This document shows, piece by piece, positions 25,301 through 49,856 of a DNA stretch of 64,000 nucleotides. The translations under genes and the position numbers were made by a program. Where the stretch lies: NCBI RefSeq assembly GCF_001194135.2, contig NC_068993.1, forward strand, positions 25,070,398 to 25,134,397. Reading direction: 5' to 3'. The notes beneath the pieces are model-generated. The model saw only the letters and a program-made list of their open reading frames with translations. It was not told the origin of the DNA and ran no database searches. Origin of the DNA: Octopus bimaculoides. Lineage: Eukaryota. Numbering within the stretch: position 1 is the stretch's first letter; every line of letters starts with the position of its first letter.

Positions 25301-25331
<31 letters not shown>

Positions 25332-27806: not shown

Positions 27807-27807
<1 letters not shown>

Positions 27808-27838
<31 letters not shown>

Positions 27839-28880: not shown

Positions 28881-28881
28881 G

Positions 28882-29421: not shown

Positions 29422-29427
29422 TATATA

Positions 29428-32244
29428 TGTTGTGAATCTTGCAGACAGGAAATAGATTTAATCCTAGATTTCCAAATTTAAATTAACACTTCAACAGCAC
29501 TTTTCTCACAGTAAAACTATTGTTTTACTGTGACAGCAGCTTACATTTGCCAGGTGCCTTAGCTAAGCAAAATAATGTCTTCGCCTCTTGACCCTTCGAC
29601 TCTCTTATAAGCCACCAAAAGCTAGAATTAAAATAACAAGTACCACCAACGAAATCTATTGTTCTCAACGATATGTCTATCCTTCTGGGTAGTTATAAAA
29701 ACAAGAACCCCCATGCAAAAGTGATTTAGTGAGTGAGAACAGACTCTGGCTGAACAAAACGCTTGTCGCAAAAGGGCACAAAAGGTCAACTATGATATCT
29801 CACCAATGAAGCAGTTGTTTTATTACAACTTCAGTCATCACTGTTCCTTCATCATTACATAATGGCAATCAACTAACAACAAACTATTACAATTGGTGAT
29901 GACCCTCGACTTCAACGAAGAACCAATCCTTACAAATTGGTGACTCAACCGTTACACTAACTAACTTCTACCATTCCAAATTGGTGATCCCAACGTTGCA
30001 CCATAACAGGCATCGATTACAAATTGGTGACCCCATGTAAAAAGAATTGCTGCCTTCTGAAGCTACATTAGCTGCTATCTTTTCCTCACTACTTCAGCTT
30101 AAAAAAGAACTACAGTCATCATATCAAGTCGTTAGACCAAAGGAAAAATAACGATAACCTTCATCTCCACCAAGATGCATCCTCTTTCAACCTGCTACAA
30201 ACAGCTCTATACTGTGATCCACACTACAATGCACTTTTCAACAATGCAACACTGCTGATGCACAAGGAATTTGCTGACCATAGAAGCCAATAAATGCATC
30301 ATTTCGACAGCTACGTGCCCAGAAATTAACTGGATAAAACTATGGAAGTCCACACATGCAACATTTTCAACAGCCATAGACTTGAAATTTCTTTGCATGC
30401 ACCTATTTTTGCATTTCAAATGCTACTTTTTAGCTTTTCAGGACCAGAACACTTTCTAACCAAGTTTGTCATTTTAGCTTGATTAATTTTGTTGTTTGCA
30501 TTGCACATGCATTGTTCACCTGTTTTTATTACATGGTTTCTGCTAAATGTTCTTCTTTTGAATGTCTGCAATTCCTTTCTTCGCATGCACCTTTCCTAGG
30601 CGGCTGGCCTTGTGCATGCATCTGCACACATTGTTACACACACACACATGCCTTTCTCGTTTGTTTTTCATGCTCCATGACCTTGTAGACACAACTCGTC
30701 TCTGTAAGACCCTAGGTCGGTCATGCATACATAGAGAAAGTTGTTTGTCCCTCACAATGCGCCAGCATGCCACACTTTTCACTCCTGCACGATCAAGGCA
30801 TATAATACCTCGTGCACCGGCTGGTATATTCAGCACTGCCTTAATCTCTGGCATATTCAATACCATACACTGTATTTGTAATCAATGCACTAGCATTACT
30901 GCATCAGCCTTGCAAGCTTTGTTGTACACATGCACACGCACCTCTATTATGCCTCTACTGCCTTGTTTTTTTTCAACACGTCTGTATCAGCTCAACACTT
31001 ATCCTGACTTGATTCATGTTGGATGTTCATATGCTCTGCGCTCATGTTTAGACATAATTTCCCCGTTAGACCCCTGTTTGGTCATGTAATTAACAGAGAA
31101 AATTATCTGTCTTGGGCATCACTCTGGCATGCTTACACTGTCGTCCTTGCTAACCTCAGCTAGTATCCACGACAACAGCACCAGACATAATTTTACTTCT
31201 GAAAAATCTTCAAGGCATTTCATAAACTGCAACCCTGCAGGAGGATCTTCCATATCATGGACTGAGAATACACTCACTCGCTCACCTGAGCTTATTGTAC
31301 TGTGAATTTCGAAACATGCACCTGCACTCATGTATACACCCTCATGCGCACTCACATGCTCATTTTCTTTTCTGCCTAGTCACTGACTGCACACATTTTG
31401 GCACACAAAGCGACACTGCAATTCAAATTTATCCGAATAAAAAACTGTCCCATATACACTTCAATGATCCTCTCTCCTAATATGTGAAAGTTTTCCTCAA
31501 CCATACATTTCTTTCTCTTCCTCAATCATTTTTTTCCTTTTCCCCGGAAGCTCTCTGGTGGGGGAGTTATGTTGTGAATCTTGCAGGCATGAAGTAGATT
31601 CGATCCCAGATAGCCAAATTTAAATTAACACGTCAACAGCACTTTTCTCATGGTAAAACAATAGTTTTTCAGTGACAGCAGTTTACATTTTCCAGATGCC
31701 TTAGCTAAGAAAATAATGTCTTCGCCACTGGACCCTTCTAACCTCTTATAAGCCACCAAAAGTTAGAATTAAGATAACAAGTACCACCAACAAAATCTAT
31801 TGTTCTCAATGACATGTCTATCCTTCTAGATAGTTATAAAAACAAGAAGCCCCAGGCAAAAGTGATTTAGTGAGAACAGAGTTCAGCTGACCAGCTGAAC
31901 TAAATGCCATCACAAAAGGACAATTATGGTAACTCACCAACGAAGCAGTTGTTTCGTCCTACACTTTCTCATTCTCACTTTATTTTCTCTTACATCACTC
32001 TATTTCTATTTGTAATTACTACGACACAATGACGAGAACACAAACACAAACTATACAAGGAAAATCTACGACATCTATCTTTACTTCGCATGCTTTACGA
32101 TTTTATCACCTGCCCGTTGAGGCAAGGTATTTTACAATGTAACGGTACAATAAATACTATTTTTACAACTTCAACCACTGTTCTTTCATCTTTACATAAT
32201 GGCAATTAACTAACAACAAACTATTACAAATGGTGATGACCCTC
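29428..32244 (+). mobile_element. Internally deleted Gypsy-type LTR retroelement (LTR1 29428-29891, LTR2 31570-32228)
   Basis: Two homologous TGT...TTACA repeats. tRNA-Trp-like PBS (TGGTGA..CCC.C.AC) after LTR1; PPT tctctggtgggggagtta directly before LTR2. No intact ORF. Confidence 0.8.
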
Positions 32245-32869
32245 NNNNNNNNNNNNNNNNNNNNNNNNNNNNNNNNNNNNNNNNNNNNNNNNNNNNNNNN
32301 NNNNNNNNNNNNNNNNNNNNNNNNNNNNNNNNNNNNNNNNNNNNNNNNNNNNNNNNNNNNNNNNNNNNNNNNNNNNNNNNNNNNNNNNNNNNNNNNNNNN
32401 NNNNNNNNNNNNNNNNNNNNNNNNNNNNNNNNNNNNNNNNNNNNNNNNNNNNNNNNNNNNNNNNNNNNNNNNNNNNNNNNNNNNNNNNNNNNNNNNNNNN
32501 NNNNNNNNNNNNNNNNNNNNNNNNNNNNNNNNNNNNNNNNNNNNNNNNNNNNNNNNNNNNNNNNNNNNNNNNNNNNNNNNNNNNNNNNNNNNNNNNNNNN
32601 NNNNNNNNNNNNNNNNNNNNNNNNNNNNNNNNNNNNNNNNNNNNNNNNNNNNNNNNNNNNNNNNNNNNNNNNNNNNNNNNNNNNNNNNNNNNNNNNNNNN
32701 NNNNNNNNNNNNNNNNNNNNNNNNNNNNNNNNNNNNNNNNNNNNNNNNNNNNNNNNNNNNNNNNNNNNNNNNNNNNNNNNNNNNNNNNNNNNNNNNNNNN
32801 NNNNNNNNNNNNNNNNNNNNNNNNNNNNNNNNNNNNNNNNNNNNNNNNNNNNNNNNNNNNNAAAACAAG

Positions 32870-35490
32870 TGGTCAAATCTTACATTTTAATGGAACTTAA
32901 TTGTCAATATAGTTTCCTTGATTATCTCTGACATCTTTCTATCTACTTGTAAGCTTTTTAATTTCATTAGTGAAAAACTCTTTCAGATTTGAAGAGAAAA
33001 ATTCTGAAAGGCCAGTTTCAACTTCCACAGTTGTTTTGAGAGTCAATCAATCCAAATCATTCTGTAAACTACAGAAGAAATGGTAATCTGGGGAATAAGG
33101 CGGATGAGCAATTTTCTCTCAGCCAAGTTCTTCGATCTTTTGTGACGTGATCTTTGCAGTGTGGGGTCTTGCACTATTCTGATGAAACACCAGTCCCTTT
33201 TGGTTCACTACAGCAGGCATTTTTTTCTTCAAAGCAGTGTTCAAACACTCAAATTGCTGACAGTAGATTTGAGCACTAATCATTGCATTTGTTTGCAGCA
33301 ACTGAAAGTGGTTGACTCGTTTGCAATCCCACCAAACAGAGATAACCTTCTTTTGCATGGAGTTCTCTTTTTGGTTGTGGTTGGGCCTTTTCCCCTTCAC
33401 CAAGCCAATGTCTACGGCACTTAACATTTTGATAAAAAGCCCATTTTTCCTCACCAGTCACCATCATCATCATCATTTAACATCTGCTTTCCATGCTAGC
33501 ATGGGTTGGACGATTTGACTGAAGACTAGTGAACCAGATGGCTACACCAGGCTCCAATCTGATTTGGCAGAATTTCTACAGCTGGATGCCCTTCCTAACG
33601 CCAACCACTCAGAGTGTAGAGGGTGCTTTTACGTGCCAGTCAGGCGGTATTGGCAACGGCCATGCTCAAAATGGTGTATTTTACGTGCTACTTGCACAGG
33701 AGCCAGTCCAGGGGCACTGGCAACGATCTNNNNNNNNNNNNNNNNNNNNNNNNTTCGCAAGCCGAGTTTTGTGTCCAATGAAGGAGACGATGTTGGCATG
33801 GGTGCCAGTCGTCGAATTTAGTTCGATTTCGATTTCACTTGCCTCAACAGGTCTTCACAAGTGGAGTTTAGTGTCCAATGGAAGGAGAGGTACACATAAG
33901 TGGGCTGGCTACGCCCCTGGCAGAGGCCTTTGGTTTGGGTCTCACTTGGCTTGCCGGGTCTTCTCACGCACAGCGTATTTCCAAAGGTCTCGGTCAGAAG
34001 TCATCGCCTCGGTGAGGCCCAATGTTCGAAGGTCATGCCTAACCACCCCATTCCAGGTCTTCCTGGGCCTACCTCTTCCACAGGTTCCCTCAACCGCTAG
34101 GGTGTAGCACTTTTTCACACAGCTATCCTCATCCATTCTCGCCACATGACCATACCAGCGCAATTGTCTCTCTTGCACATCACAACTGATGCTTCGTAAG
34201 TTCAACTTTTCTCTCAAGGTACTTTCACTCTTTCTAGTAAGCACACTGACATTACACATCCATCGGAGCATACTGGCTTCATTCCTTGCGAGCCTACGCA
34301 TCTCTTCAGCAGTCACGGCCCATGTTTTACTGCCATGAAGTATGTCTGTTTGTACACATACGTCATACAGTCTGCCTTTTACTCTGAGAGAGAGAGACCC
34401 TCTGTCACCAGCAGAGGTAAGAGCTCTCTGAACTTTGCCCAGGCTATTCTTATTCTAGCAGCTACACTTTCAGCGCACCCTCCCCCACTACTAACTTGGT
34501 CACCTAGATATCGGAAGCTATCAACCACTTCTAGTTTTTCTCCCTAGAAAGTGGCAGAAGTTGTTTTCTGCACATTTACAGTGTTTATAGCTCCTGAACA
34601 TCTGCTACAAACAAAAACTAACTTCCTAGTTAACCTTCCTTTGATATTGCTGCACCTCTTATGTGTCCATAGCTTGCACTGGGTGCATCTTATAGAGTTT
34701 CTACCTACGCCTTTTCTACAGATCGAGCAGGGCCATCTACCTGAAGGGGTTTGTGTTTTTCTACCTTCCTACTTATTAGGACTTTGGTTTTAGCTAGGTT
34801 GACTCTAAGGCCGTTCAATTCTAGTCCTTGCTTCCATACCTGAAACTTCTCCTCTAGTTCTGAGAGTGACTCAGCAATCCAGTCTGTCCAAAAAGGGGGA
34901 GATGAGTTAACGAGAATGAAGAGAAGAGATGTTCACTTGGGATTTGCAGTTAGCTACAGACAAATTGCAAGGCACCCATTTTATGAGTTTTGGAACCTTT
35001 CCAAGCTGTTGAAGATGGTAGTGAACAGTTGTATGGCTTGAATGAAGCTTGCTTGCCAATTCTTCAAATGAAACTGCATGATCTTTTTCAAGTTCTGCCA
35101 AAAGAAGCTTGTCATCAAACTCAACTGGATGTTCTGTTCGGGCCTCATCTTCAAGGCTGAAATCTCTTCTGAATTTTACAAATCATATTCTGCAAGTTTT
35201 TTCCTTCAGGTACACTTCTCCATAAGCTGAGTGAATATTTCAAGTCACTTCAGCTGCAGAGTTTCCTTTTTTAAACTCATAAATACTCAAATACTCCTTA
35301 GACACTTCCATGTTTGAATAGCTATAATTAGTGAAATTTCAATTAGATTATCCTGCTAAACGAAATTTAATCAGTTTAAATATGTCCAAATACATATATT
35401 ACTTGATGCCATTAGACATCCTAAAATACTGTTAAAGCATTTACAAATTGTAAATATAGAAGTCCAGATATTACTTATGGGATGACCTGA
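32870..35490 (-). mobile_element. mariner transposon split by an RTE insertion
   Basis: 5' TIR TA|TCAGGTCATCCCATAAGT at 35490. N-half MEVSKE..KWVPCNLS..FLDRL (to 34881); C-half VTGEEKW..SVWWD..HQNSARPH..HPPYSPD (33461 down to about 32900). Confidence 0.85.
33462..34880 (-). mobile_element. 5'-truncated RTE LINE
   Basis: RT C-terminus (MTAEEMRRLARNEASMLRWMCNVSV...GRGRPRKTW), 3' UTR and (GAT)n tail. Confidence 0.9.
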
Positions 35491-35494
35491 TATA

Positions 35495-36725
35495 TCAGTT
35501 TGAGTAAAAAATAAGCAACGTTTTGAGCCAAGAAGAATTTGTAACAAATTTTTGTAGAGTTTTGAATTCTTTAAAAACATTTTTTTGCAATTCTCTGATA
35601 ATATAGACACAAACTTGCCCAAATGCATCAATAAATTAACATTGATATCTTTTTCACTGTTGTTACAAACATCTGAAATGGAACTGTCAAAGTAAGATAT
35701 TTGAGCAATTTTGCTATTCAACTTCAAAAAAGGACGTAAAGCAGCTGAAATTGCTTGCATTATCAACGAAATGTTTGTGAGGAAATGACCAGTGAGTGGT
35801 CAGCTCAAAAATGGTCTAAACAATTTTGCAGTGGAGCCCTGAGCCTTGAAGATTGTGAGTGTAGTGGACGCCCATCTGTCATCATTGATGGTCAATTAAA
35901 GACTGTCATTGAGAAAGATCCACGTAAAGCCACTCGAAAACTGGCAAAAGAACTTCAAGTTTGCTAGAAAACTGCTTGCAACCATTTGCATGTGATCAGA
36001 AAATCAAAAATGCTCGACAAATGGGTACTATATGATTTGAATGAAAATTAGAAAATGCACAGATATGGAATTTGCTCATCACTTCTCCATTTCTTGACTG
36101 TATTGTAACTTACGATGAAAAGTGGATTCTGTACAATAATAAAAAATGTTCTGTGCAGTGGTTGGACCAAAATGAAGCACTGAAAACCTTCCCTAAACCC
36201 GAGCTCTTCAAAACAAAGGTCATGGTGACTGTTTGGTGGTGTACTGGACTCATCCACTATAACTTCTTAAAACCCGGAAAAACCATTACTGCAGAAACAT
36301 ATTGCCATGAAATTACCAAAATGAACGAAAAACTGCTACTCCTTTGTCCCAGACTGGTCAACAGAAGAGGGCCAATCATTCTTCATGACAATGCTCGACC
36401 ACATGTTTCACTACGAAGTTCTTCCCAACCGAGCTTATTCCTCAGACCTTTCTCCTACCAACTACCACTTTTTCAAGCAACTTAATGGTTTCCTGCAAGA
36501 GAAGGAGTTCAAAAATCAAACCGATGCTGAATATGCATTCAAAGAGTTTATCAGCTCTAGAACTCCAGATTTTTATGTTACTGGAATAAACAAACTCGTA
36601 ACTTGTTGGCAAAAAAGTGTTGATTGTAATGGTACTTACTTTGATGAATAAAATTTCCGCATTGTTGAAATATATTGTGATGAATTTCAAGTTTTAAAAC
36701 GTTGCCTACTTTTTACTCAGCCTGA
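35495..36725 (+). mobile_element. Full-length (1231 bp) decayed mariner, Hsmar1/cecropia-like
   Basis: TIRs TCAGTTTGAGTAAAAAATAAGCAACG / CGTTGCCTACTTTTTACTCAGCCTGA with TA on both sides. Transposase motifs VTYDEKW, LHDNARPH, YSSDLSPTNYHFF, with stops and frameshifts. Confidence 0.9.
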
Positions 36726-36729
36726 TATA

Positions 36730-36860
36730 TATGATAGGCTTCTTTCAATTTCTGTCTACAAAATCCACTCACAAGGCTATGGTCAGCGCAAAGCTATAGT
36801 AGAAGATACTTGGCCAAAGTGTCATGCAGTGGAGTGAACCCAAACTTTTTACCACACTGA
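36730..36860 (-). mobile_element. SINE family A head fragment
   Basis: ggcttctttcaatttctgtctacaaaatccactcacaaggc... Confidence 0.65.
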
Positions 36861-38180
36861 ATGTAGGGCTTAACTAGAACTTTATTCTATTGACCCCCAA
36901 AAGATGAAAGCAAAGTTGAACATGGTGGGATTTGAATTTAGAACATAAGGAAATTATGCTTTTAGGACAATCCACTGAGGGTTATGGACCAAGCAATGAC
37001 AAATCTATCATTGGAAGTAAACCCAGGAATGATGGCTCTTTAGAAAATAACAAAATCAATAGCATATGGAAGTCAGAGAATACTATAATGCTAGTGGGAA
37101 CCTTTGAAGGCAAAAGATTAGCTCCAAGTATATTCTAAAGGAAAGGAAATTGACATAGACTTCACTAGGTTTTCGTAAAGCAAGATATTTTTTCATTGAG
37201 AAGGAGCCACAATTTTTGTCAAATTACATTTCTATATGTCCAGAAATAACCACCATGGTCTGAAACATTTTACTTAACTACATCATCCACCTTATCTGAG
37301 ATTGCCGTTGTTATTGAGCTGATCATTCGGTCACATTAGAGCTATCAAAGATTACGCGTCCTTCCTTCCTTTTTTAAGACGGTAGGAGCGTGATTTGAAG
37401 GAAACTGGCTACTACTTCCAGCAAATAAGAGACTACTTAGAGGTTTCCTGCAAGGGTTTTGATTATACGTATTGGATTTAACTTTGGACACCTAGATTTT
37501 GGAGATTGACTTTTATGTAGTGTTGTGTAAATTGGCGAAAGAAAATTGGGCTATGTTTGACTCGCAGAAGGTAACAGCTGAGCTGCGTGCACAAGCCTTC
37601 GAGTCAAAACGAAAGATTGCCCCAAAATATTTACTTAATTTCTTCCTATTTAATTCGGAAAATGCCCACCAGAATATTAAGACATAAAAATTGACATGTT
37701 GAAATATGTTTGTATTACGTGAACACGTCAATGCTTGTGTTTGTCTATACATGAACAGAAATCTACACCACGAGTATATACTGCAGTTGAACACAGGAAA
37801 ACACCAAACTTCACATAGTACTTCGTTATGATACAATACTAAATACACGTGTAAGCAGTACCAAAACACGGTATCTGTCACGAGACACCAAAATAAACAA
37901 GTCACACTAGAACATTCTCTAATTGTACCCAGTTACAAACAACAGAAGTTTTCTCGGCAAAGGTAAAGAATACGTACACCAGGTGGCTAGATTAGGGTTT
38001 TTGTTACGCTGAAAATAGGTGGTGTATATATTCTTTACCTCCGCCGTTTTCTCTGTAAAGAACATGAGAATGTTTCAATACAAGAAGTCTTTATGGCGAG
38101 TTTTGACAAAGTGCATATGACGTGTAAAGAAAGAACAAAGCTAAAAGACGTCATTATAGTATAAAGAAATTATTAGTTAC

Positions 38181-38258
38181 CGTTTTGACTAGAGGTAATT
38201 TAGCCTTTCCAACTAGATTCCATACAGTAGGATCGAGATGTTGCCGTACGTCAGCCAT
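38181..38258 (-). CDS. COMMD8: COMMD8 coding exon 1 (MADVRQHLDPTVWNLVGKAKLPLVKT)
   Basis: Strong start context caaaATGGCT and phase-0 donor ACG|GTAACT, compatible with exon 2. VWNLVGKAKLP resembles human LWRLQKLP. Lies in a CpG-richer, TE-poor patch. Linkage to exon 2 across 31.7 kb is an inference. Confidence 0.7.
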
Positions 38259-38272
38259 TTTGACAACAATGA

Positions 38273-38282
38273 ATCACGTGAC
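38273..38282. promoter_or_regulatory. E-box / CLEAR-like element TCACGTGA, 15 nt upstream of the COMMD8 ATG
   Basis: Minus strand GTCACGTGAT matches the CLEAR consensus GTCACGTGAC at 9 of 10 positions. Function is inferred. Confidence 0.4.
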
Positions 38283-39209
38283 AATAATTAGAGTAACCAG
38301 GGTGTGGGTGTGGCTTTGTTTTCTTCACTCGGTAGGCAAGTTAGACTTGCCATTTCCTGTAACCGCTATTTCTTTTGCAGACATTGTGGAGTTAGAAATA
38401 TCCTATATATATATGATATATATATATATATATATATATGATATATAACCACCACTTCCCACTTTATCTATTTATTTATTTTATCAATGCCGGTATTACT
38501 GTCACAGTCAATTATTATTTGCGAAGGATTGTGCTGTTATTTCTAGCTAGCTGTACGAGCATATAGAGCAGATATTTTCAACCACTGCTAAGTATGATTT
38601 ACTGGTGCCACGAATCGGAAAATTCTAAGATATTTAGAAAACTCTAATGTTTTTAAAACACCACACAGAAGCATGCGTATTTATTTTCGGCAAATTGCAA
38701 TGCATACGCCCATCTGTTTGATTTTATCTTCATTTATATAATAAAAAACAAAACAAAAAAATATGGTTTAAAAGGGCTAATGATGCGATATGACACGTAG
38801 CACCTTATTCAGTGTGTCGTGGAGGAAAAGCTAAAATTGCTGATTCGGAAGTTGGTTCGTAGTTGTTAGTGTATGAGCATGTATACAGGTAATGTAAATG
38901 GTTTCTTTGTCTGGCCATGTGACAGAGTATATGCATGTATTGGGGGCGTTTCTTAGTATATATGTTTGAGCCTGGTTTCTGTTGTTTTTTGCTAGTGTAT
39001 ACACAGAGCATGTGCATATAGAGGCAACGCACTCGTTAAGACAAGAATACTTACTCGTGCACATTTAGACATGTATTAAAGCATAGTTACAAACACCGTA
39101 CACTCAATTATTATATAATATAGACACATATATAGTGTACATATATGCTCATATGGGACGATAAACGACCGGAAAGCCTTTAATTATGTTTATTCCATCA
39201 GGGTTAACC

Positions 39210-39410
39210 AGAGATGGCAGAAACGTTAGCACGCCGGGCAAAATGCTTAGCAGTATTTTGCCTGTCTTTACGTTCTGAGTTCAAATTCCACCGAGCTCGA
39301 CGTTGCCTTTCATCCTTTCGGGGCCGATAAATTAAGTACCAGTTGCATACTGGAGTCGATCTAATCGACTGGCCCCCACCTCAAAAATTTCGGGTCTTGT
39401 AGGCACCGGT
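39210..39410 (+). mobile_element. SINE family B
   Basis: Same head and Meta-like core as 3813-4051. Confidence 0.8.
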
Positions 39411-40276
39411 CCCAATAGTATTTACTGGACACAATAGCACTCATTGGGACTAACAGAAGACTACAACGTACATAGGTCAGAATTGGGTTCCACAGATCTG
39501 TAGAGCCCCTAGGCAACTGCCGAGTGTGCCCATGCCTTAAGACGGCTTTACATGTAGTATTTAGTTGTGGCCACTTACATTCGAAGTTCAAATCTCGCTG
39601 AGATAGAAAAACTGCACGTCAGTCAATAACTGAACAGATTTCTATAATCAATATATCAAAGACTTGAATGAAATTATAGTAGAAGACCACAACTGAGTCT
39701 TCCGAACATTTCTCATTCTTTCGTTCTCTCAATATACACTATAGTTGATTGGCTAAACTATATACCAATGAAATCACTTTACTATAGTTTTTCTTTTTCC
39801 GTCTTTCACACCGTTCCACGTTTGTTATTGTTTTATATATATATATTCTCACTCAATTTACTTTTTTCCTATCCTGCCTTCGCCGTTTCTATCTCTATTT
39901 TCTCACTCATTCATTGCTCTCGTTATTCCACTTTTTGTTCCATTCTGTTCTCTTTCTGCCACTTATATTTATCCTCCCCCCACCTTACTCTCTCACAACT
40001 CTACTGCTTCACATCCCCGCCACTTTAGCTGAGACACGTCATGACATGTAGAACAACAACAACACTTAGCAGCGGTACTTCCTACTACTGTGTGTGAGTA
40101 GATCGATCGTAGCTACGAACGCTGCAATAGTCACTGTTGTGATTTCCGGGACTCTGGGATAAACAAAAGGAAAACTAGCCAAGTATTGAACTATAATCGG
40201 CACGTGTTCCAGTAGTTCGTTGTTGGAAAACAGGGAAGTTCGAATTGTCACGAGAAACTTTATCCTTCGTCCTTCT

Positions 40277-40308
<32 letters not shown>

Positions 40309-41513
40309 CACCAATTATTGAAGTACGGCCGTGCTGGAGCTCCATACTAATTTTTCTGTTCTTCGTTAACGAACGTTTTGATATAAATGCTGAAACGAAA
40401 ATTACAACATAAATGAAAATGAATTTATTTTAGACAATAAGAAATTTGTTTTCATCTTGGTGAACAGTCAATATAAATAACAACAATATCATCGAAAAAA
40501 GTCCATTCAAAACTATTTGAACTCGCTAAGAAGAGGAAACTAAAGCAGAAGTAAGAAGCCAGGAAGTGGAATGTTTTCCCATTTACTTCGCACAACTTTG
40601 TGTTCAATGATGAAAATATGCTGAAGTGTGCAGTTAGAGATTATGAATCTAATGAGCTATGTGACATCTATTCTTTACACGAGCTGACTGCAGAAATGGA
40701 TTGGAAGTGACCACACCGGACAATGTATGCTATCTGTTGATCCGTTCACCGCTGTCGAAATGAAGAACTGTAGAATCGCTAATTTCAATGGAAGGATTTC
40801 CAAATGTTCGGAGTATCAGAGATGACAAGATGGTCAGGTTGGAAATTACCTAAATACTAAAGAGTAAAAAGAATACGCACGCTTTAAGTGCGGAAATCTT
40901 ACACAATCTCGAAAACCTGTTTTCATTGTTACCCACTTAACGCCATCCACTACTTCGTAGGTAATAAGTTTCGTGTTATTGGGGATACTTGCTAAAAACG
41001 TCTGCCAGTAGTCATATGCTTGTCCCAAAGCTTAAACCATGCAACTGTACTTGTATTAATATTATCTTTGGAATCGTAAAAAATCTGTTGCCGAATAGTT
41101 AAATAGTTAATTCCAGCACAAATTGTTGATCTGATCCAATCTTCGATTATAGCAGGTGTTTATATATATATATAGTTTTACACTCCACAATTATTTTTAC
41201 ATACCATTCTCTTATTAATTATCAATAGTTATATCATTGTATATTATATTATAACTATTACTACTATAAATTAAAGAAAACGTTAAGGCAAATCCCATGT
41301 GTATTCCTTCTTTACTTGCGGATTAGCTTGTCAAACTATTTATTACCTGTTAGAAACAACACGTTGACAAATAGCCCTTTAAATACTTCATAATTATTAA
41401 GGGTTTAATGTGATTACTTTTCGAATATGATTATGTTTCACGCATAAGATATATTTAACGTATCAACAATGGTTGAAAATTTATTTAGTTGATTTTATAT
41501 GTAACTGCGCTCG

Positions 41514-41556
<43 letters not shown>

Positions 41557-41571
41557 ACCAATATGTGTTTA

Positions 41572-41960
41572 ATGAACTTTTTCTCGCGTCTTCTTCTAAG
41601 CTCATCTCCTCGGCGCACCAATCGCCGTATTGTCCCCAATCACACTATAAACATACGTCTTTCCGATAAAGACCACCCCAATCATGCTTATAAAACCAAC
41701 AAAATAAAAACTACCAAATATAGCATTTTAACGTTTTTACCTAAAAATCTTTTTGAACAGTTCCACCGTTTGGCTAACATTTTTTTCATATTTGTGGTGA
41801 TTCTAAATTGGATTCCACAGGTACAGGCTTTCGGTAAAGAAATAGCCATGGTACCTGTGATATTTGTTCTTGGAGTAACTGCTGTTAAAGACATATTTGA
41901 AGATTTCCGGAGAGGATTATCAGACAGACAGATCAACCAGAACACGTGTCGAGTTTTGGG
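41572..41960 (+). CDS. ATP10: Class-5 P4-ATPase (ATP10A/B/D-like phospholipid flippase), first large coding exon; start uncertain
   Basis: RIVPNH...YKTNKIKTTKYSILTFLPKNLFEQFHRLANIFFIFVVILNWIPQVQAFGKEIAMVPVIFVLGVTAVKDIFEDFRR...DRQINQNTCRVL. LNWxP and AFxKE are ATP10 hallmarks. Phase-2 donor GG|GTATGT at 41960/41961. Confidence 0.9.
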
Positions 41961-42440
41961 GTATGTAATTAATTTGTCCTTTATTTTATTGTATTTTTTA
42001 AAGTGTTTACAAGTGTCGTTGCATTACTACTGAAAATTTCTTATCTCAGCACTTCTGAAAGATTTTACCACATGCTAAAATAACAAATATTGGGTAAATT
42101 TCTTTTTCTATTGTCGATGCCGTACCTTCAACGACACCTTGTTCACCTGTGATAATTGGTTACCACTAGCTACCAGTGACTGTTTAGCAGTGACAATTAG
42201 CTCGCTGCACAAGTCGGAATTATGTAAATCCAGTGAGAAGTGTGTATGTGGTGGGGCTTTCAGCCAACTTGAAAACTTAGATGAGTACGAGAAATTTGTA
42301 TGAATGCCAAAAGTGAAAATAAATAAATAAGGATTTTAAAATTAAAACAAATGAAGAAAATAATCAATAGCATTGCCTTATCACAGAACTATTTAGTTTC
42401 TTTTGTTCCACATTCTTGGCAATGATACCTATGAATTTTC

Positions 42441-42631
42441 GGTAATTTTTCAGATTAACACCCGCACGATCTTCACTAGGCGGTTAGGGTTTTAGGGTCA
42501 GGGTTAGGGTTTTAGGGTTACGGTTAGTGACGGAATTCCCTAACCCTAAACCCTAACCCTAACCCTGACCCTAAAACCCTAACCCTAACACCCTAGTGAA
42601 GATCGTGCGGGTGTTAATCTGAAAAATTACC
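42441..42631. mobile_element. 191-bp palindromic MITE with telomere-like repeats and 8-bp TSD (Merlin-like termini)
   Basis: TSD GAATTTTC at 42433-42440 and 42632-42639. Ends GGTAA.../...TTACC; outer 40 bp of the arms are perfectly complementary; inner arms are (TTAGGG)-like and (CCCTAA)-like. Confidence 0.85.
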
Positions 42632-43597
42632 GAATTTTCTTCTAAAGTGTGAAAACAATTTTTATGCTATATAATATTAAGAAACTGCAAATGTCACACT
42701 TTAACCGACCGATCTCTTTTGTATACTTCAATATATGCCTTATATAAATGAAGTATTTCATTCTGGGATAGGTATTCCAGACGTGTTATATTTATATAAT
42801 ATTTTACCAGCGAATAGCTGATTCATCATCCTTTTGTTAGGACAGCAGATTATTTAGCTCACGTTAACTTTTCTGCAGGATGCCTTATTTCTCAGCTAAG
42901 TCAAATATGACAAGCGCTCATCTCTGAAAGTTTAACATATCAAGTAGGCTCAAGCATGGCTGTGGTTAAATGTTCGCTTCATAACCTCGTGGTTCTAGGC
43001 TCGATATATCTTCTATTATAGTTTATTGTTGAAATTTGGTAGACGTAAACTGTAGACAACTGTGTGGATATGAGTGTTTTTGCATGTGTAACACACAACA
43101 CACACACACATCACATATATATGGGGAGAGAAAGAGTGAGTGTGTGTGTGTCAGTAATGTTTACACGTGACCTTATATTTCTTAACCTAGCAACTAGACA
43201 ATTAAAGATCAATAAAATAAATGCCTGACTGAAATAAGTTGCGGGATCTCGATGTGATCGATCATTGATTGGAGAAGGATTCGCAGTAGCCTTGAATCAT
43301 TGGATGATAGTTCAATGAATGAAACCAGCAAAAAGCAGAAATGAAACTTGTGATATCATGTACCAAGTATTCTTGATACAAACTCTTATTCTAGAATCTA
43401 TTCTATATACTTTTCTGCTTTGTCAATTTAAAGGACTCTTGAATAAACTCATTTAAAATGTCAAAAACTGTTGTACGGAATATACACTGTACATGTCTAA
43501 ATTTCATTAACCAGAAAATATCTTATGAAACTTTAAGAGCCTTTTTTTCTTTGGAGTCTACCCCGATTCCTTGATTTGTAGCTTCATTATATATAGA

Positions 43598-43810
43598 TAT
43601 CGGTTTCAAATTTTGGCGTAAGGCCAGCAATTTTGAGGGACGAAGTCGATCACAACAGTCCCAGTACTCAACTGATACTTATTTTTATCGACCCCAAAAG
43701 AATGAAAGGTAACACTGACCTTCTTAGAATTTGAACTCATAACGCAAAGACAGATGAAATGGTGCTAAGTATTTTACCCAGCATGCTAACGATTCTGCCA
43801 GTTTGCCACA
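43598..43810 (-). mobile_element. SINE family B (diverged)
   Basis: Reverse complement of the ggcagaatcgttagcatgctggg head and tttcattcttttggggtcgataaaaataagta core. Confidence 0.7.
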
Positions 43811-43832
43811 ATGTTTGTATATGCATGTTTTT

Positions 43833-43874
<42 letters not shown>

Positions 43875-43878
43875 TCCT

Positions 43879-43929
<51 letters not shown>

Positions 43930-45745
43930 CCAGGTAAATATGTACCTCCTCTACAGCAAGACATCTGTTTCTGTCTCACTGTTTCACCATAACCTTTCAT
44001 CATGTGGCATAAGATCACCTCCTCCAATTCCACCTCCCCTTTCAAAGGATATTTGTCCAGCAAATTATTTGGTGACCCTGTCAGTGCAGGTGCCACTTAA
44101 AAAGCATTCAGTCCACACTATAAAATGGTTGGTGTTTGAAAGAGCATCCAGCTGTTAAAACCTTGCCAAAACTGGCCTTGCTTGTCTTTGCACCATGTAA
44201 AGAGCACTCAGTCCACTCTGCTGAGTGGTTGGTGTTAGGAAGGGCACCAGTCAGAAAAACCATGCCAAACCAAACACAGGTGTCTGGTGCAGGTTCCTGC
44301 TTGGCTGGTGCCTGCTTGACCAGCTTCTGCTAGGTTGGCTCCTATTAAACTGTCCAACCCATAGCAACATGAAGAGTGGGTTTTAAACAATGATGATTAC
44401 ATATATATATATATATGATATAATATATATATATATGATATAATATATATATATATATGATATAATATATATATATATATGATATAATATATATATATAT
44501 ATATGATATTATATATATATATATATATGATATGATATATATATATATGATATGATATATNNNNNNNNNNNNNNNNNNNNNNNNNNNNNNNNNNNNNNNN
44601 NNNNNNNNNNNNNNNNNNNNNNNNNNNNNNNNNNNNNNNNNNNNNNNNNNNNNNNNNNNNTGTGCATACTTGACAGTGTAAGTACCTTGAAAGAAAAGTT
44701 GGACCTAAGAGAGACGACTGCGCTGGAATGGTCATGTGGTAAGAATGGATGAGGATAGCTGTCTGAAAAAGTGCCACACCCTAGCGGTTGAGGGAACCTG
44801 TGGAAGAGGTAGANNNNNNNNNNATATATATATATATATATATGAATGATATAATACATGATATGATATATATGTATATATATATATATGATATATATTA
44901 TTATTTATATATATGTGTGTAATATCAGTGTGCATACTTGACAGTGTAAGTACCTTGAAAGAAAAGTTGGACCTAAGAGAGACGACTGCGCTGGAATGGT
45001 CATGTGGTAAGAATGGATGAGGATAGCTGTCTGAAAAAGTGCCACACCCTAGCGGTTGAGGGAACCTGTGGAAGAGGTAGACCCAGGAAAACCTGGGATG
45101 AGGTGGTGAAGCACAACCTTCGAACATTAGGCCTCACCGAGGCAATGACTTGAGACTGAGACCTCTGGAAATATGCAGTGCATGAGAAGACCCGGTAAGC
45201 CAAGTGAGACCATAATCTGAGGCCTCTGCCAGGGGTGTAGCCAGCCCACTTATGCGTACCTTTCCTTCATTGGACATTAAACTCTGTTTGCGAAGATCTG
45301 TTGAGGCAAATGAAATCAATCCAAATTTGGCGACTGGCACCCATGCCAGCGTCGTCTCCTTCAATGGATACTAAACTCGGCATGCGAAGACCTGTCGGAG
45401 CAAGTGAAATCGAAATCATGATTGAACCAAATTCGATGACTGGCACCTGTGCCAGTGGAGCTCTAAGAGCACTGTCTGAGCGTGATCATTGCCAGAGCAG
45501 CTGTCTGGCTTCCATGCCAGTGGTCTGTAAATAGCACTATTTGAGCATGATCGTTACCAGTGTCGCGTTACTGGCACTTGTGCTGGTGGCACGTGAAAAA
45601 ACATTCAACCGTAGTCATAGCCAGTGCCACTGGACTGGCTCCTGTGCAGGTGGCACATAAAAAACACCATTATGAGCGTGGCCGTTGCCAGTACCGCCTG
45701 AGTGGCACGTAAAAGCACCCACTACACTCTCAGAGTGGTTGGCTC
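43930..45745 (+). mobile_element. RTE-type LINE fragments (3' UTR and tail 43930-44400; RT C-terminus and 3' UTR 44661-45745)
   Basis: STLKEKLDLR..GRGRPRKTW homology and family 3' UTR, interrupted by (TA)n and gaps. Confidence 0.75.
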
Positions 45746-46155
45746 CTTGTCTACGTGCATGCAAAGGCACATAGACAGGGAGCAGAAAGGAACGGCCAGC
45801 ATCTACTAGATTCAAAATAGCCAATTGCATTTGTTAGCATCAAAGTCAAAGATTTACTTACAGAGACAGTGAATATATATCACTTCAGGAGATACGACTG
45901 GATTCCATTATACAGGTAAACTGTTGCTTAATTTAAATCATATGTTTATGTGGATCTATGTTGTATCAAAATGTACTCCTTCCTGTTGACTTTATTTATT
46001 CAATTTATATAAATGATATATAAATTCTTACAGATATAGGGTAAAAATTAATAATAAATTAATAATTAGTAATCTTACCAAGTAGTTCGGTGTGTTAAAA
46101 AATCATTATCGGCAAACTTATACAAAAGTTTTATAATTATAAGCATAATTATAAT

Positions 46156-46449
46156 TAGGGTTCAGCAAAAATTGCTTCACTACACACCGAAAATTAGAAA
46201 TAGCAGTCAAAACTACTATTTCACTACCAAAATATGTCTTCCAGACAGCAACACTCGCAACTAAAACACAGGCAAAAGAGAAAAAATAACGAACTTACTT
46301 TGATTAAGCCGGGTAGGTTCGTTATTTTTTTCTTTTTTGCCTGTGAGTGAGTGTTGCTGTCTGGGAGATATATTTTGGCAGTGAAATAGTAGTTTTTACT
46401 GCTATTTCTAATTTTCGGTGTGTGGTGAAGCAATTCTTGCTGAACCCTA
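46156..46449. mobile_element. hAT-type palindromic MITE
   Basis: TAGGGTTCAGC...GCTGAACCCTA, arms about 140 bp. 8-bp flanks ATTATAAT / ATTTTAAT (1 mismatch). Confidence 0.75.
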
Positions 46450-46814
46450 ATTTTAATTATATGTATGATATATATNNNNNNNNNNNNNNNNNNNNNNNNN
46501 NNNNNNNNNNNNNNNNNNNNNNNNNNNNNNNNNNNNNNNNNNNNNNNNNNNNNNNNNNNNNNNNNNNNNNNNNNNNNNNNNNNNNNNNNNNNNNNNNNNN
46601 NNNNNNNNNNNNNNNNNNNNNNNNNNNNNNNNNNNNNNNNNNNNNNNNNNNNNNNNNNNNNNNNNNNNNNNNNNNNTTATATATACATATGTGATATATA
46701 TATATATATATTTATATATACATATGTAATATATATATATATATATTTATATATACATATGTGATATATATATATATTTATATATACATATGTGATATAT
46801 ATATATATATATAT

Positions 46815-48145
46815 ATCATCACCATCATCATTTAACATCCGCTTTCCATGCTAGCATTGGTTAGACAATTTTACTGAGGACTGGCAAGTTAGAAGGCTGC
46901 ACCAGGCTCCAATCTGATTTGGCAGAGTTTCTATAGCTGGATGCCCTTCCTAATGCCAACCACTCCGAGAGTGTAGTGGGTGCTTTTACGTGCCACCGAC
47001 ACGAGGGCCAGTCACACAGTACTGGCAACGGCCACGCTCAAAAGGTGTTTTTTACGTGCCACCTGCACAGGAGCCACTCCAGCGGCACTGGCAATGACCT
47101 CACTCGAATGATTTTCTAACGTGCCACTAGCACGAAACAAGACAGCTGCTCTGGCAATGAACATGCTCGACAGTGCTGTTAGTGCTCCACTGGTGCGGTG
47201 ACCAGTCATCGAGTATGGTTCAATTTCGATTTCACTTGCTCCAACAGGTCTTCGCAAGCAGAGTTTATTGTCCAATGAAGGAAAGGTTGGCATGGACACC
47301 AGTCATCGGATTCGGTTCAATTTCGATTTCAGATTCAAATTTCAAATTCCAAATTCACTTGCCTCAACAGGTCTTCGCAAGCAGGGTTTTTAGTGTCCAA
47401 TGAAGTAAAGATACAGATTAGTGAGCTGGCTACACTTCTGGCAGAGATCACAGATTATGCTCTCACTCGCTTTGCCGGGTCTTCTAATGTACTGCATATT
47501 TCCAAAGGTCCCGGTCACTGGTCAAGGCCTCGGTGAGGCCTTAGGTTCGAAGGTCGTGCTTCACCACCTCATCCCTGGTCTTCCTGGGTCTACCTCTTCC
47601 ACAGGTTTCCTCAACTGCTAGGGTGTGGCACTTTTTCACACAGCTATCCTCATCCATTTTTGCCACATGTCCATACCAGCACAATCATCTCTCTTGCACA
47701 CCACAACTGATGCTTCTTATGTCTAACTTTTCTCTCAAAGCACTTACACTCTGTCGAGTATGCACACTTACATTACACATCCATCGGAGCATACTGGCTT
47801 TGTTTCTTGCAAGCTTACGCATGTCCTCAGCAGTCACGGTCCATGTTTCACTGCCATGTAGCATGGCTGTTCGTACACATGCATCATACAGTCTGCCTTT
47901 TACTCTGAGTGAGAGGCCCTTTGTCACCAGCAGAGGTAAGAGCTCTCTAAACTTTGCCCAGGCTATTCTTATTCTAGCAGCTACACTTTCAGTGCACCCT
48001 CCCCTGCTACAAACTTGGTCACCTAGGTAGCAGAAGCTATCAACTACTTCTAGTTTTTCACCCTAGAGTGTGGTAAAGGTTGTTTTCTGCACATTCTCAG
48101 TGTTTATTGCTCCTGAACATCTGTCACATACAAAAACTATTTTGC
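46815..48145 (-). mobile_element. 5'-truncated RTE LINE
   Basis: MTKGLSLRVKGRLYDACVRTAMLHGSETW... plus 3' UTR and (CAT)n tail. Confidence 0.9.
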
Positions 48146-48494
48146 CTAGCACGCATAAGGCAGTTACCCCCATATTCTCCTATATACACACACTAAGGGC
48201 CTCTGGTACTCAACAATATTCTGCCAGAGTTTGGATCAGTTATTGTCTACTTATCTACCCATAAATAGAATGCTTCTTAGCATGTATATACACATAAGGA
48301 TAGTTATTTACTATTATTTTTATCTGCATATAGACTTCTTAAAAGTCCATTCATTAACTCTTATAACCCTTGTATTGATATTTACACTCCATCTATATAA
48401 GTGTATATGTGTATATACATATATGTATGCATGTATATGGATATGGAGAGATATACATAGTATGCGTGTGTGTGGGTGTACGTATGCATGCGCG

Positions 48495-48720
48495 CCCTAG
48501 CCTCTTGACCAGTTGGTGTCTACCCAACCGTAGCTAAGCCTAGATAGTTTCAAACAATAGCTGTCCATTTAGATGGGAGGAATTAACTGTAGAAATTAAC
48601 CCTCCCCAAATAGCAGCAGAAACTTTTACCCACTGGAAGAAGTAACAGGATATCCTACACCGCAAAGTTAGAAAGTTTGACATATTATTATTATTGTTGT
48701 TGTTGTTGTTGTTATCATCA
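48495..48720 (+). mobile_element. Possible CR1/L2-type LINE 3' end
   Basis: LVSTQP*LSLDSFKQ*LS resembles the CR1/L2 RT C-terminus and is followed by a microsatellite tail. Confidence 0.4.
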
Positions 48721-49030
48721 TAATCATCATTATCACTGTTATTGCTACTAGAATATTAATAACTCGTATGAAATGAACTTCCACATAAACTCATCCAAAA
48801 TATATAGAACTGACACACACACACTCAGCAAAAAAGTTTTTTAAAAAAACATAAACAGCCTTCGAAACACAGTGGATAGCGTTGGTACCAGAGACCATGT
48901 ACATAAGAGAATGCCTGTGTATACATATTTGTATATGTATACGTATGTGTGAGCGGATAGATGGATATAGACACACATGTGTACTCACATATATATATGA
49001 TCTTGAATCATTGAACATCTGAGTATAGTT

Positions 49031-49560
49031 ATGCACACGGACTTATATATTGGAGTGTCTATAACTATTTGTATGACCTCATGTACTGTTTGTAGGCTTT
49101 TTATGTGCCTTATATTTTTATATTTTTATATTTTTTATATGTTATATTTTCATTTTTCATTTATTTATTTTTTTATTTTATTCTTGCTGTACCCTTATTT
49201 TATTTTTATTGTTGTTTTTATTTTTATTTCTATTTCATTTTTGTTTTTGTCTCTTACTGTATATCTGTATGGAATTTTTTGTGAATCTCTGAAGAGGCCT
49301 AGCGAATCGTGCATGTACCCCCATTTCAGCATTTCATCCACTAATTACTCCGGCAGGAGCTATTCGGATAGAATGGGGCATGCCAATGCTAGGCCGAAAC
49401 AGCTGTAAGATTAAGTTTATGTTTATTCTCAAATTCCTTATGTACTTTTATTTGTAAACCCGGTTGTCAATATAACATGGTTTGTCATAAACACTTGTAC
49501 TTTGTGGTTTTTTGTCACTTTAGTTACAAATTAAGTTAATGAATTCAACGGGATACACTG
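49031..49560 (+). mobile_element. Penelope-like element remnant (pLTR region)
   Basis: HTDLYIGVS (possible YIG half of GIY-YIG), an AT-rich tract and a hammerhead motif, which is the layout typical of PLE terminal repeats. Confidence 0.5.
49284..49412 (+). ncRNA. Type I hammerhead ribozyme with extended loop II
   Basis: Stem I AATCT(49284-88)/AGATT(49408-12); core CTGAAGA(49289-95); stem II GGCCTAGC(49296-303)/GCTAGGCC(49388-95); GAAA(49396-99); palindromic helix III ACAGCTGT; cleavage triplet GTA (after 49407). Confidence 0.8.
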
Positions 49561-49792
49561 TCTGCAAGTCGTTGGGTACAGAATATTATCCTCCAATTTC
49601 TAATCGATACATAAATTTAAGGTAACCACCCCCCCTTTTACCCACTCCCACNNNNNNNNNNNNNNNNNNNNNNNNNNNNNNNNNNNNNNNNNNNNNNNNN
49701 NNNNNNNNNNNNNNNNNNNNNNNNNNNNNNNNNNNNNNNNNNNNNNNNNNNNNNNNNNNNNNNNNNNNNNNNNNNNNNNNNNNNNNNNNNNN

Positions 49793-49856
<64 letters not shown>

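What the first reader, a model, noticed from the sequence alone, without database searches (positions are those of the whole stretch)
38181..41960. COMMD8 and ATP10 are head-to-head here as in human: candidate ancient bilaterian gene pair with a compact shared promoter
Seen: the COMMD8 ATG (38258, minus) and the ATP10-like ATG (about 41572, plus) diverge only 3.3 kb apart, whereas the adjacent introns are at least 22-32 kb and full of TEs. Known (from memory): human COMMD8 and ATP10D are head-to-head neighbours on 4p12, and coleoid genomes have lost much ancestral microsynteny. Inference: the linkage and orientation may date from the protostome-deuterostome ancestor, possibly held by shared regulation of two membrane-trafficking genes (Commander/CCC subunit and lipid flippase). 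Two COMMD8 exons are missing from the ORF track, so the pair is easy to miss.
Basis: partly seen in the sequence, partly recalled or inferred. Interest (0 to 1): 0.75.

Follow-up and report, generated by a model that had tools for sequence, protein, structure and literature searches.

The report
Ancient COMMD8–ATP10 head-to-head gene pair
In this octopus sequence the trafficking gene COMMD8 and an ATP10-type lipid flippase start back-to-back 3.3 kb apart, an arrangement also found in other molluscs and matched by gene adjacency in vertebrates, which makes it one more ordinary example of a well-known class of anciently linked gene pairs.

Summary
COMMD8 exon 1 (38258-38181, minus) and exon 1 of a class-5 (ATP10) P4-ATPase (41572-41960, plus) diverge 3,313 bp apart. 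They are flanked by a 31.7 kb intron and an intron of at least 22 kb, both carrying transposon remnants. Both gene identities hold.

The same head-to-head pair occurs in Octopus vulgaris (3.4 kb), Argonauta hians (4.4 kb), Lottia gigantea (1.4 kb) and two unidentified invertebrate contigs (about 0.6 kb and under 4.1 kb). Published gene lists place COMMD8 next to ATP10D in cattle, chicken and a teleost. I could not verify the vertebrate orientation. No annelid, amphioxus or echinoderm could be examined. Sponge-like and insect-like contigs lack the pair.

In octopods the intergenic stretch is the only part of the window that is not CpG-depleted (observed/expected 0.97 against 0.33). It has almost no transposons. 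It holds two conserved non-coding elements: a TCACGTGA E-box 15-24 nt upstream of the COMMD8 ATG, also present in Lottia, and a 117 bp central block. These point to two separate promoter elements inside one protected domain, not a proven single shared promoter.

Verdict: a real, probably bilaterian-age divergent gene pair, a new member of a known kind, of modest interest.

The parts
38181..38258 (-). COMMD8 coding exon 1 (26 codons, ATG at 38258)
   Evidence: Sequence and ORF. tblastn with O. vulgaris and Argonauta COMMD8. Included in the Pfam COMMD8_HN match.
6472..38180 (-). COMMD8 intron 1 (31.7 kb, rich in transposon remnants, with assembly gaps)
   Evidence: GT..AG boundaries. Mariner transposase fragments at 33119-33454 and 36072-36485 and a reverse transcriptase fragment at 20546-21187. 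Collinear with the 31 kb intron of O. vulgaris.
6310..6471 (-). COMMD8 exon 2 (54 codons)
   Evidence: Sequence. tblastn 93% identity to O. vulgaris. COMMD8 HMM E = 2.5e-13.
4946..5101 (-). COMMD8 exon 3 (52 codons, ends at the start of the COMM domain); exons 4-5 are outside the window
   Evidence: Sequence. tblastn. COMMD8 HMM E = 2.8e-12.
38273..38282 (-). E-box / CLEAR-like motif GTCACGTGAT, 15-24 nt upstream of the COMMD8 ATG; candidate proximal promoter element of COMMD8
   Evidence: Conserved at the same position in O. vulgaris and Argonauta (GTCACGTGAC) and 4-13 nt upstream of the ATG in Lottia. TCACGTGA occurs only twice in the window and once in the 21 kb Lottia locus.
38259..41571 (.). 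Intergenic region between the two start codons (3,313 bp)
   Evidence: It contains only one SINE-like repeat (39211-39400) and two (TA)n runs (38404-38447, 41516-41553). No Rfam family reached its gathering score (one sub-threshold hit on the AT repeat) and no tRNA was found.
37600..41900 (.). Domain that is not CpG-depleted (observed/expected 0.97, against 0.33 for the rest of the window); inferred germline-unmethylated promoter domain spanning both first exons
   Evidence: The same contrast is seen in O. vulgaris (0.97 against 0.20-0.45) and Argonauta (1.0 against 0.51).
40011..40127 (.). Octopod-conserved non-coding block with AGACACGTCATGACATG (CRE-like), CACTTCCT (ETS-like) and GTAGATCGATCGTAGCTAC (ATCGAT palindromes); candidate core promoter or enhancer, most likely for the ATPase or for both genes
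   Evidence: It is the only non-repeat, non-exon blastn match between the window and Argonauta in the intergenic region (73-76% identity). The 17-mer and the 19-mer are identical between the window and Argonauta. It lies in the 250 bp bin (40000-40249) with the highest identity to O. vulgaris among the intergenic bins, 0.952.
41572..41960 (+). ATP10-type (class 5) P4-ATPase coding exon 1 (N-terminal domain and the first membrane helices)
   Evidence: Pfam PhoLip_ATPase_N. 71% identity to the oyster 'ATPase VD-like' protein, 67% to amphioxus ATP10A, 58% to shark ATP10D and 47% to human ATP8B1.
41961..64000 (+). ATPase intron 1 (partial, at least 22 kb, with transposon remnants)
   Evidence: No further exon found by tblastn with the full-length oyster orthologue. 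Reverse transcriptase fragment at 51498-51884 and integrase fragment at 62956-63267.

Best explanation
This is a conserved divergent (5'-5') gene pair. COMMD8 encodes a Commander-complex subunit. Its neighbour is the single invertebrate pro-orthologue of vertebrate ATP10A/B/D, a lipid flippase.

[quoted passage not shown] In compact genomes the two start codons are about 0.6-1.4 kb apart, which is the geometry of a bidirectional promoter. In octopods, whose introns have swollen to tens of kilobases, the spacer grew only to 3.3-4.4 kb. It remains an unmethylated, almost transposon-free promoter domain.

Shown: the gene identities, the arrangement in the mollusc genomes examined (octopods and Lottia) and two unidentified contigs, the CpG contrast, the lack of transposons, and two conserved non-coding elements.

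Inferred: the pair is kept together because the promoters and proximal regulatory elements of both genes are packed into this short spacer, so any breakpoint would damage at least one gene. The two elements are an E-box at the COMMD8 start and a central CRE/ETS/ATCGAT block about 1.5 kb upstream of the ATPase start codon. Whether the genes are truly co-regulated is not shown.
For: Gene identities: COMMD8_HN domain in the window, Lottia, L007 and L013; class V names on the named best full-length hits; 117-133 bits to vertebrate ATP10D/ATP10A against 84 bits to ATP8B1, 77 to ATP8A1 and 58 to ATP11C.

Arrangement: Lottia 1,402 bp; Argonauta about 4.4 kb, two copies; O. vulgaris 3,399 bp with the whole spacer collinear; L007/L008; L013 about 600 bp.

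Vertebrate adjacency: GABRB1-COMMD8-ATP10D-CORIN in cattle, with both genes also listed in one interval in chicken and a teleost.

Promoter domain: CpG observed/expected 0.97 against 0.33, repeated in two other octopods. The stretch 37571-42431 is the longest uninterrupted block collinear with O. vulgaris; the spacer is 100% alignable against 37-62% for the introns. It holds only one 190 bp SINE.

Conserved elements.

Framework: most conserved ancestral microsyntenic pairs are 5'-5' with short spacers (PMC3514665).
Against: - The head-to-head orientation in vertebrates could not be verified. No ATP10D coding exon lies within 10 kb of COMMD8 in Rhea or Polyodon, so the pair is not compact there.
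- Only two phyla are confirmed. L007 and L013 are unidentified and may also be molluscs.
- No COMMD8 was detected within 10 kb upstream of the ATP10-like exon in a cephalopod-like contig (L002), a spider (L003), two sponge-like contigs (L011, L012) or any of 80 metagenome loci, including insect-like ones.
- Identity to O. vulgaris in the spacer (0.897) equals that in the introns (0.897-0.913), so there is no general sequence constraint.
- A CpG-rich spacer is expected between any two methylated gene bodies and does not by itself show sharing.
- The transcription start sites are unknown.
Confidence: 0.7

Rival explanations
1. Neutral persistence. The pair is ancestral but is kept only because a spacer of about 1 kb offers a very small target for rearrangement breakpoints. 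There is no shared or interleaved regulation, and each gene has its own independent promoter.
For: Identity to O. vulgaris in the spacer is no higher than in the introns. The two conserved elements lie 1.7 kb apart, one next to each gene's side. The pair is missing in many lineages, as expected for an unconstrained linkage that decays. In vertebrates the coding starts are more than 10 kb apart.
Against: Coleoid genomes are reported to have broken much ancestral local gene order (PMC9023564), yet the pair survives in octopods. The spacer stayed almost free of transposons while the flanking introns grew to 22-32 kb. Conserved ancestral pairs as a class are enriched for 5'-5' orientation and co-expression (PMC3514665).
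Confidence: 0.22
2. Convergent adjacency. Molluscs and vertebrates acquired the COMMD8-ATP10 neighbourhood independently, so the pair is not of bilaterian age.
For: Only two phyla are confirmed. No intermediate lineage was examined, and sponge-like and insect-like contigs lack the pair.
Against: Randomised gene orders in 12 species gave on average 0.015 pairs meeting the four-lineage criterion, against hundreds observed (PMC3514665). Within molluscs the same two genes are in the same orientation across the gastropod-cephalopod split. The E-box next to the COMMD8 start is shared by Lottia and octopods, and a related GTCACGTG lies 34 nt upstream of the ATG in Rhea.
Confidence: 0.06
3. Wrong orthology. 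The flippase belongs to another P4-ATPase class, or the COMM gene is another COMMD paralogue, so the comparison with human 4p12 is empty.
For: Only the first exon of the ATPase (130 residues) is in the window, and no full-length tree was built.
Against: Of the ten full-length best hits whose names were looked up, every named one is class V, including amphioxus ATP10A and shark ATP10D. Bit scores to ATP10 are 33-49 bits above the best non-ATP10 structure. The COMMD8-specific Pfam domain scores above its threshold, and the only significant solved-structure match is COMMD8.
Confidence: 0.02

Closest known systems
Conserved ancestral microsyntenic pairs (CAMPs) of Irimia et al. 2012 (PMC3514665), e.g. 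HSPE1-HSPD1
   Same: Two unrelated genes kept adjacent across distant animal phyla, in 5'-5' orientation, with a short spacer in compact genomes. The proposed cause is shared or interleaved cis-regulation.
   Different: Their criterion asks for linkage in at least four lineages, counting each non-vertebrate species as one. Here only two phyla are confirmed. I could not read their supplementary list, so the pair may or may not already be in it. Co-expression was not tested here.
Classical bidirectional promoters (divergent transcription start sites less than 1 kb apart; Adachi and Lieber 2002, as cited in PMC3514665)
   Same: Divergent orientation. ETS-like and CRE-like motifs in the conserved central block. 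A spacer that is not CpG-depleted. About 0.6 kb between the start codons in L013 and 1.4 kb in Lottia.
   Different: In the window the start codons are 3.3 kb apart and the transcription start sites are unknown. The two conserved elements are 1.7 kb apart, so a single shared core promoter is unlikely in octopus.
Vertebrate GABRB1-COMMD8-ATP10D-CORIN block (human 4p12)
   Same: COMMD8 sits directly next to an ATP10 family member (gene lists in PMC7764440, PMC10976558, PMC8102513).
   Different: Vertebrates have three ATP10 paralogues and only ATP10D keeps COMMD8 beside it. The octopus gene is a pro-orthologue of all three. The spacing in vertebrates is more than 10 kb between coding starts. The orientation is known to me only from memory.
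Metazoan microsyntenic blocks retained in cephalopods (Schmidbaur et al. 2022, PMC9023564)
   Same: Ancient linkage that survived the coleoid genome reorganisation.
   Different: As I read the text retrieved, those analyses used clusters of at least three genes, so a two-gene pair may fall outside them. Neither gene name occurs in the six supplementary files held.

Membership tests
COMMD8 (Commander complex subunit) | COMMD8-specific helical N-terminal domain (Pfam PF22838) | tested here: met
   53.4 bits against a cut-off of 27 for window exons 1-3. The only significant solved-structure match is human COMMD8.
COMMD8 (Commander complex subunit) | C-terminal COMM domain (PF07258) | not testable with these tools
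   Exons 4-5 lie outside the window; only the first residues of the domain (NFDWKVN) are present. The 91%-identical O. vulgaris orthologue P0121 carries PF07258.
Class 5 P4-ATPase (ATP10A/B/D) | P4-ATPase N-terminal domain (PF16209) | tested here: met
   89.5 bits against a cut-off of 29.
Class 5 P4-ATPase (ATP10A/B/D) | Closer to ATP10 members than to any other P4-ATPase class | tested here: met
   Among the ten full-length best hits whose names were looked up, the named ones are VD, VA or VB, including amphioxus ATP10A and shark ATP10D. Scores are 133 and 117 bits to fish ATP10A and shark ATP10D, against 84 to ATP8B1, 77 to ATP8A1, 58 to ATP11C and 44 to ATP9A. In a neighbour-joining tree it groups with vertebrate ATP10 and away from ATP8B1, the single outgroup. 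All of this is based on exon 1 only.
Class 5 P4-ATPase (ATP10A/B/D) | Full P-type core (phosphorylation, nucleotide-binding and C-terminal domains) | not testable with these tools
   Only exon 1 is in the window. The annotated O. vulgaris and Argonauta neighbours (1229 and 1228 aa) carry PF16209, PF13246, PF00702 and PF16212.
Conserved ancestral microsyntenic pair (Irimia et al. 2012) | Linkage in at least four lineages spanning distant animal groups | tested here: inconclusive
   Linked in vertebrates (literature), Lottia, octopods, L007 and L013. Only Chordata and Mollusca are identified. Absent or not detected in sponge-like, insect-like, spider and other loci.
Conserved ancestral microsyntenic pair (Irimia et al. 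2012) | Conserved 5'-5' orientation | tested here: inconclusive
   Met in all six invertebrate genomes or contigs that have the pair. Not verifiable for vertebrates with these tools.
Bidirectional promoter | Divergent transcription start sites less than about 1 kb apart, driven by one promoter region | not testable with these tools
   No transcript-start data are available. ATG-to-ATG spacing is 3.3 kb in the window, 1.4 kb in Lottia and about 0.6 kb in L013.

The most novel reading that the evidence does not exclude
The COMMD8-ATP10 divergent pair is a co-regulated unit of bilaterian age. Its anchor is the TCACGTGA (CLEAR-type) E-box beside the COMMD8 start. This would tie a Commander subunit and a lipid flippase to one MiT/TFE- or USF-type endolysosomal transcription programme for more than 500 million years.
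Probability: 0.12. Interest if true: 0.5.

Novelty: new member of a known kind. Interest (0 to 1): 0.3.

Why it matters
If the linkage is truly ancestral and held by regulation, it adds one concrete pair to the several hundred ancient 5'-5' gene pairs. It is small enough for experiments, because the spacer has only two conserved non-coding elements. It would also hint at coordinated control of endosomal cargo recycling (Commander) and membrane lipid asymmetry (ATP10). In addition, it shows that an ancestral promoter-sharing geometry can survive the coleoid genome reshuffle and a 20-30-fold intron expansion. It does not open a new kind of biology.

Tried and rejected
1. Vertebrate orientation. 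Look-ups of COMMD8 in Apus (no record), Polyodon and Rhea gave no ATP10D coding exon within the 10 kb flanks. A motif scan for the GABRB C-terminus also found nothing. The question stays unresolved.

2. COMMD8 exon 1 upstream of the ATP10-like exon in L002 (cephalopod-like) and L003 (Stegodyphus). HMM search, Smith-Waterman alignment and E-box anchoring gave nothing above noise. This is inconclusive, because exon 1 is only 21-26 codons long and intron 1 may exceed 10 kb.

3. Metagenome scan with an ATP10 N-terminal alignment. It returned 80 loci, many of them intron-less P4-ATPases only about 40-45% identical to ATP10. No COMMD8 exon was found in any locus.

4. Known RNA genes in the spacer. 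There were none. The single mir-297 hit is an (AT)n run far below threshold.

5. Supplementary tables. Those of Irimia 2012 are not held. Those of Schmidbaur 2022 do not mention either gene. A literature search for the pair or for a bidirectional promoter found only gene lists.

6. General sequence constraint on the spacer. Rejected: identity to O. vulgaris equals that of the introns.

7. A splice donor after the central block (GTGAGT at 40093) as evidence of a 5'UTR exon. It is not conserved in Argonauta, so this is left open.
Full report
**What is in the window.** The sequence is eukaryotic. It is 36-38% G+C, has assembly gaps and holds many transposon remnants. It is collinear over its whole length with an Octopus vulgaris chromosome segment at about 90% nucleotide identity. 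It therefore comes from a close relative of O. vulgaris.

On the minus strand, an ATG at 38258 opens a 78 nt exon that ends at a GT donor at 38180-38179. The next two exons are 6471..6310 and 5101..4946, both with canonical splice sites. The three exons joined hit the COMMD8-specific Pfam domain PF22838 at 53.4 bits against a cut-off of 27. Among solved structures the only significant match is human COMMD8. They are 91% identical to the annotated O. vulgaris COMMD8 and 67% identical to that of Argonauta hians. Exons 4-5 lie beyond the start of the window, since intron 3 is 18 kb in O. vulgaris.

On the plus strand, an exon from the ATG at 41572 to 41960 encodes the N-terminal domain of a P4-ATPase (PF16209, 89.5 bits). 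An in-frame ATG also lies at 41563. A full-length oyster orthologue finds no further exon up to 64000.

**Is the flippase an ATP10?** Only exon 1 is available, but the signal is consistent.
- An exhaustive HMMER search of 1.84 billion representative proteins returned full-length best hits. The source names of the ten I looked up are, where given:
  - ATPase VD-like or VB-like (Saccostrea)
  - VD (Wyeomyia, Trichinella, Patella)
  - VA-like (Artemia)
  - ATP10A (Branchiostoma)
  - ATP10D (Chiloscyllium)
- Bit scores are 133 to a fish ATP10A and 117 to shark ATP10D. Scores to other classes are lower: 84 for ATP8B1, 77 for ATP8A1, 58 for ATP11C and 44 for ATP9A.
- Identity is 71% to oyster, 67% to amphioxus ATP10, 58% to shark ATP10D and 47% to ATP8B1.
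- Invertebrates appear to have a single gene of this class, so the octopus gene is a pro-orthologue of ATP10A, B and D, not of ATP10D in particular. This last point is an inference.

**Is the pair conserved?** The table lists the genomes and contigs where both genes were found head-to-head.

| Genome or contig | Arrangement | Spacing between start codons |
|---|---|---|
| Lottia gigantea | COMMD8 on minus (5385-8598), ATPase first exon on plus from 10001 | 1,402 bp |
| Argonauta hians (two near-identical copies) | head-to-head | about 4.4 kb |
| O. vulgaris | head-to-head, whole spacer collinear with the window | 3,399 bp |
| L007/L008 (unidentified; ATPase closest to oyster) | COMMD8 exons 2-4 upstream on the opposite strand | under 4.1 kb |
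| L013 (unidentified) | all of exons 1-4 found | about 600 bp |

The COMMD8 identity of the Lottia, L007 and L013 genes was confirmed with Pfam.

For vertebrates, published gene lists give GABRB1, COMMD8, ATP10D, CORIN in that order in cattle. Both genes are also listed in the same interval in chicken and in a salmon study that uses zebrafish gene names.

I could not verify the orientation in vertebrates. Neither Rhea nor Polyodon has an ATP10D coding exon within 10 kb of COMMD8.

The pair was not found in the following:
- two compact-genome contigs whose ATPase is closest to a sponge (Dysidea) cluster;
- a cephalopod-like contig and a spider, both inconclusive because exon 1 is tiny;
- any of 80 metagenome loci, including insect-like ones.

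Retention is therefore patchy, as is usual for ancient pairs.

**What the spacer looks like.** Four features set 37.6-41.9 kb apart from the rest of the window.
- **CpG content.** CpG observed/expected is 0.97 there against 0.33 elsewhere, and it is the only such stretch in 64 kb. The same contrast holds in O. vulgaris (0.97 against 0.20-0.45) and Argonauta (1.0 against 0.51), but not in Lottia. By inference this marks a germline-unmethylated domain between two methylated gene bodies.
- **Transposons.** The spacer contains one 190 bp SINE-like repeat and two (TA)n runs, while the flanking introns are full of transposon remnants. The stretch 37571-42431 is the longest uninterrupted block collinear with O. 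vulgaris. The spacer is 100% alignable, against 37-62% for the introns.
- **A central conserved block.** Against Argonauta, where neutral sequence no longer aligns, only three blocks survive: the two first exons and a 117 bp block at 40011-40127. The block contains a 17-mer, AGACACGTCATGACATG (CRE-like), and a 19-mer, GTAGATCGATCGTAGCTAC (ATCGAT palindromes), both identical between the window and Argonauta. It also contains CACTTCCT (ETS-like).
- **An E-box at the COMMD8 start.** The motif GTCACGTGAT lies 15-24 nt upstream of the COMMD8 ATG. It is in the same place in O. vulgaris and Argonauta (GTCACGTGAC, the CLEAR consensus) and 4-13 nt upstream of the ATG in Lottia. TCACGTGA occurs only twice in the window and once in the 21 kb Lottia locus. 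Rhea has GGTCACGTGCC 34 nt upstream of the ATG. L007 and L013 lack the motif at this position.

On the other side, overall identity to O. vulgaris in the spacer (0.897) equals that in the introns, so there is no general sequence constraint. No Rfam family reached its gathering score and no tRNA lies in the spacer.

**How it most likely works.** The ancestral state was probably a short divergent promoter region of about 1 kb or less, as still seen in L013 and Lottia. In octopods the spacer expanded only modestly and stayed unmethylated and free of transposons. COMMD8 appears to have its own proximal promoter, with the E-box next to its start codon. The central block, about 1.5 kb upstream of the ATPase start, is a candidate core promoter or enhancer for the ATPase or for both genes.

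Any rearrangement breakpoint in such a packed spacer would damage one of the two genes, which would explain the retention. This is the coregulation/bidirectional-promoter model of Irimia et al. (PMC3514665). Co-regulation itself is not shown. Neutral persistence of a very small breakpoint target remains a serious rival.

**Comparison with what is known, and novelty.** This is a typical member of the known class of conserved 5'-5' gene pairs. I found no paper that discusses this particular pair. The cephalopod microsynteny study does not list it in the supplements held, and its cluster analysis, as I read the retrieved text, needs at least three genes. The supplementary list of Irimia et al. 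is not available to me, so prior listing cannot be excluded. The finding is sound but ordinary. The conserved E-box and the central block are the most useful new details, because they make the regulatory hypothesis testable.

Noticed in passing
window 38273-38282; L006 9978; L005 9978; L001 8603; L010 about 9967: A TCACGTGA E-box (CLEAR/USF-type) lies immediately upstream of the COMMD8 start codon in three octopods and in Lottia, with a related GTCACGTG 34 nt upstream in Rhea. In the sponge-like L012 the same octamer sits 30 nt upstream of the ATP10-like ATG instead.
   Followed up: partly
L012 666-6201 and 6894-9878: In this sponge-like contig a Tec/BTK-family kinase (BTK, SH3, SH2 and kinase domains) lies within 10 kb upstream of the ATP10-like gene. 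In cattle, TEC and TXK are listed close to ATP10D, so this may be a remnant of older linkage. The gene that is head-to-head with the ATPase here is a 994 aa FAD-monooxygenase/ADH fusion, not COMMD8.
   Followed up: no
L004 and L005 (Argonauta hians BAAFZT010000020.1, 45.4 Mb and 35.3 Mb): The whole COMMD8-ATPase pair is present twice, 10 Mb apart on one scaffold, with identical COMMD8 proteins and nearly identical spacers. This is either a recent segmental duplication or an assembly artefact. Only one of the two copies has the ATPase annotated.
   Followed up: no
L001 10001-11211 and 12215-20860; L001 about 6376-7250: The Lottia ATP10 orthologue is split into two gene models (228 aa and 842 aa) in the public annotation. 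COMMD8 intron 3 in Lottia holds a tandem array with a period of about 150 bp.
   Followed up: no
window 39211-39400, 3815-3974, 43661-43800, 58065-58253: A SINE-like repeat family of about 190 bp has four copies in the window. One copy is the only interspersed repeat inside the spacer.
   Followed up: partly
window 41563-41571: An in-frame ATG lies three codons upstream of the homologous start (MCLMNFF against MNFF). It follows a 38 bp (AT)n run directly, so start-codon choice is ambiguous.
   Followed up: no
L002 (ENA ERZ21867824 ctg113882l): This contig's ATP10 exon 1 is the closest relative of the window's exon in the protein database (75% identity, same FFSRLLL N-terminus). It shows no COMMD8 exon and no E-box within 10 kb upstream. 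The pair may be wider apart or broken in that unidentified, possibly cephalopod, lineage.
   Followed up: partly
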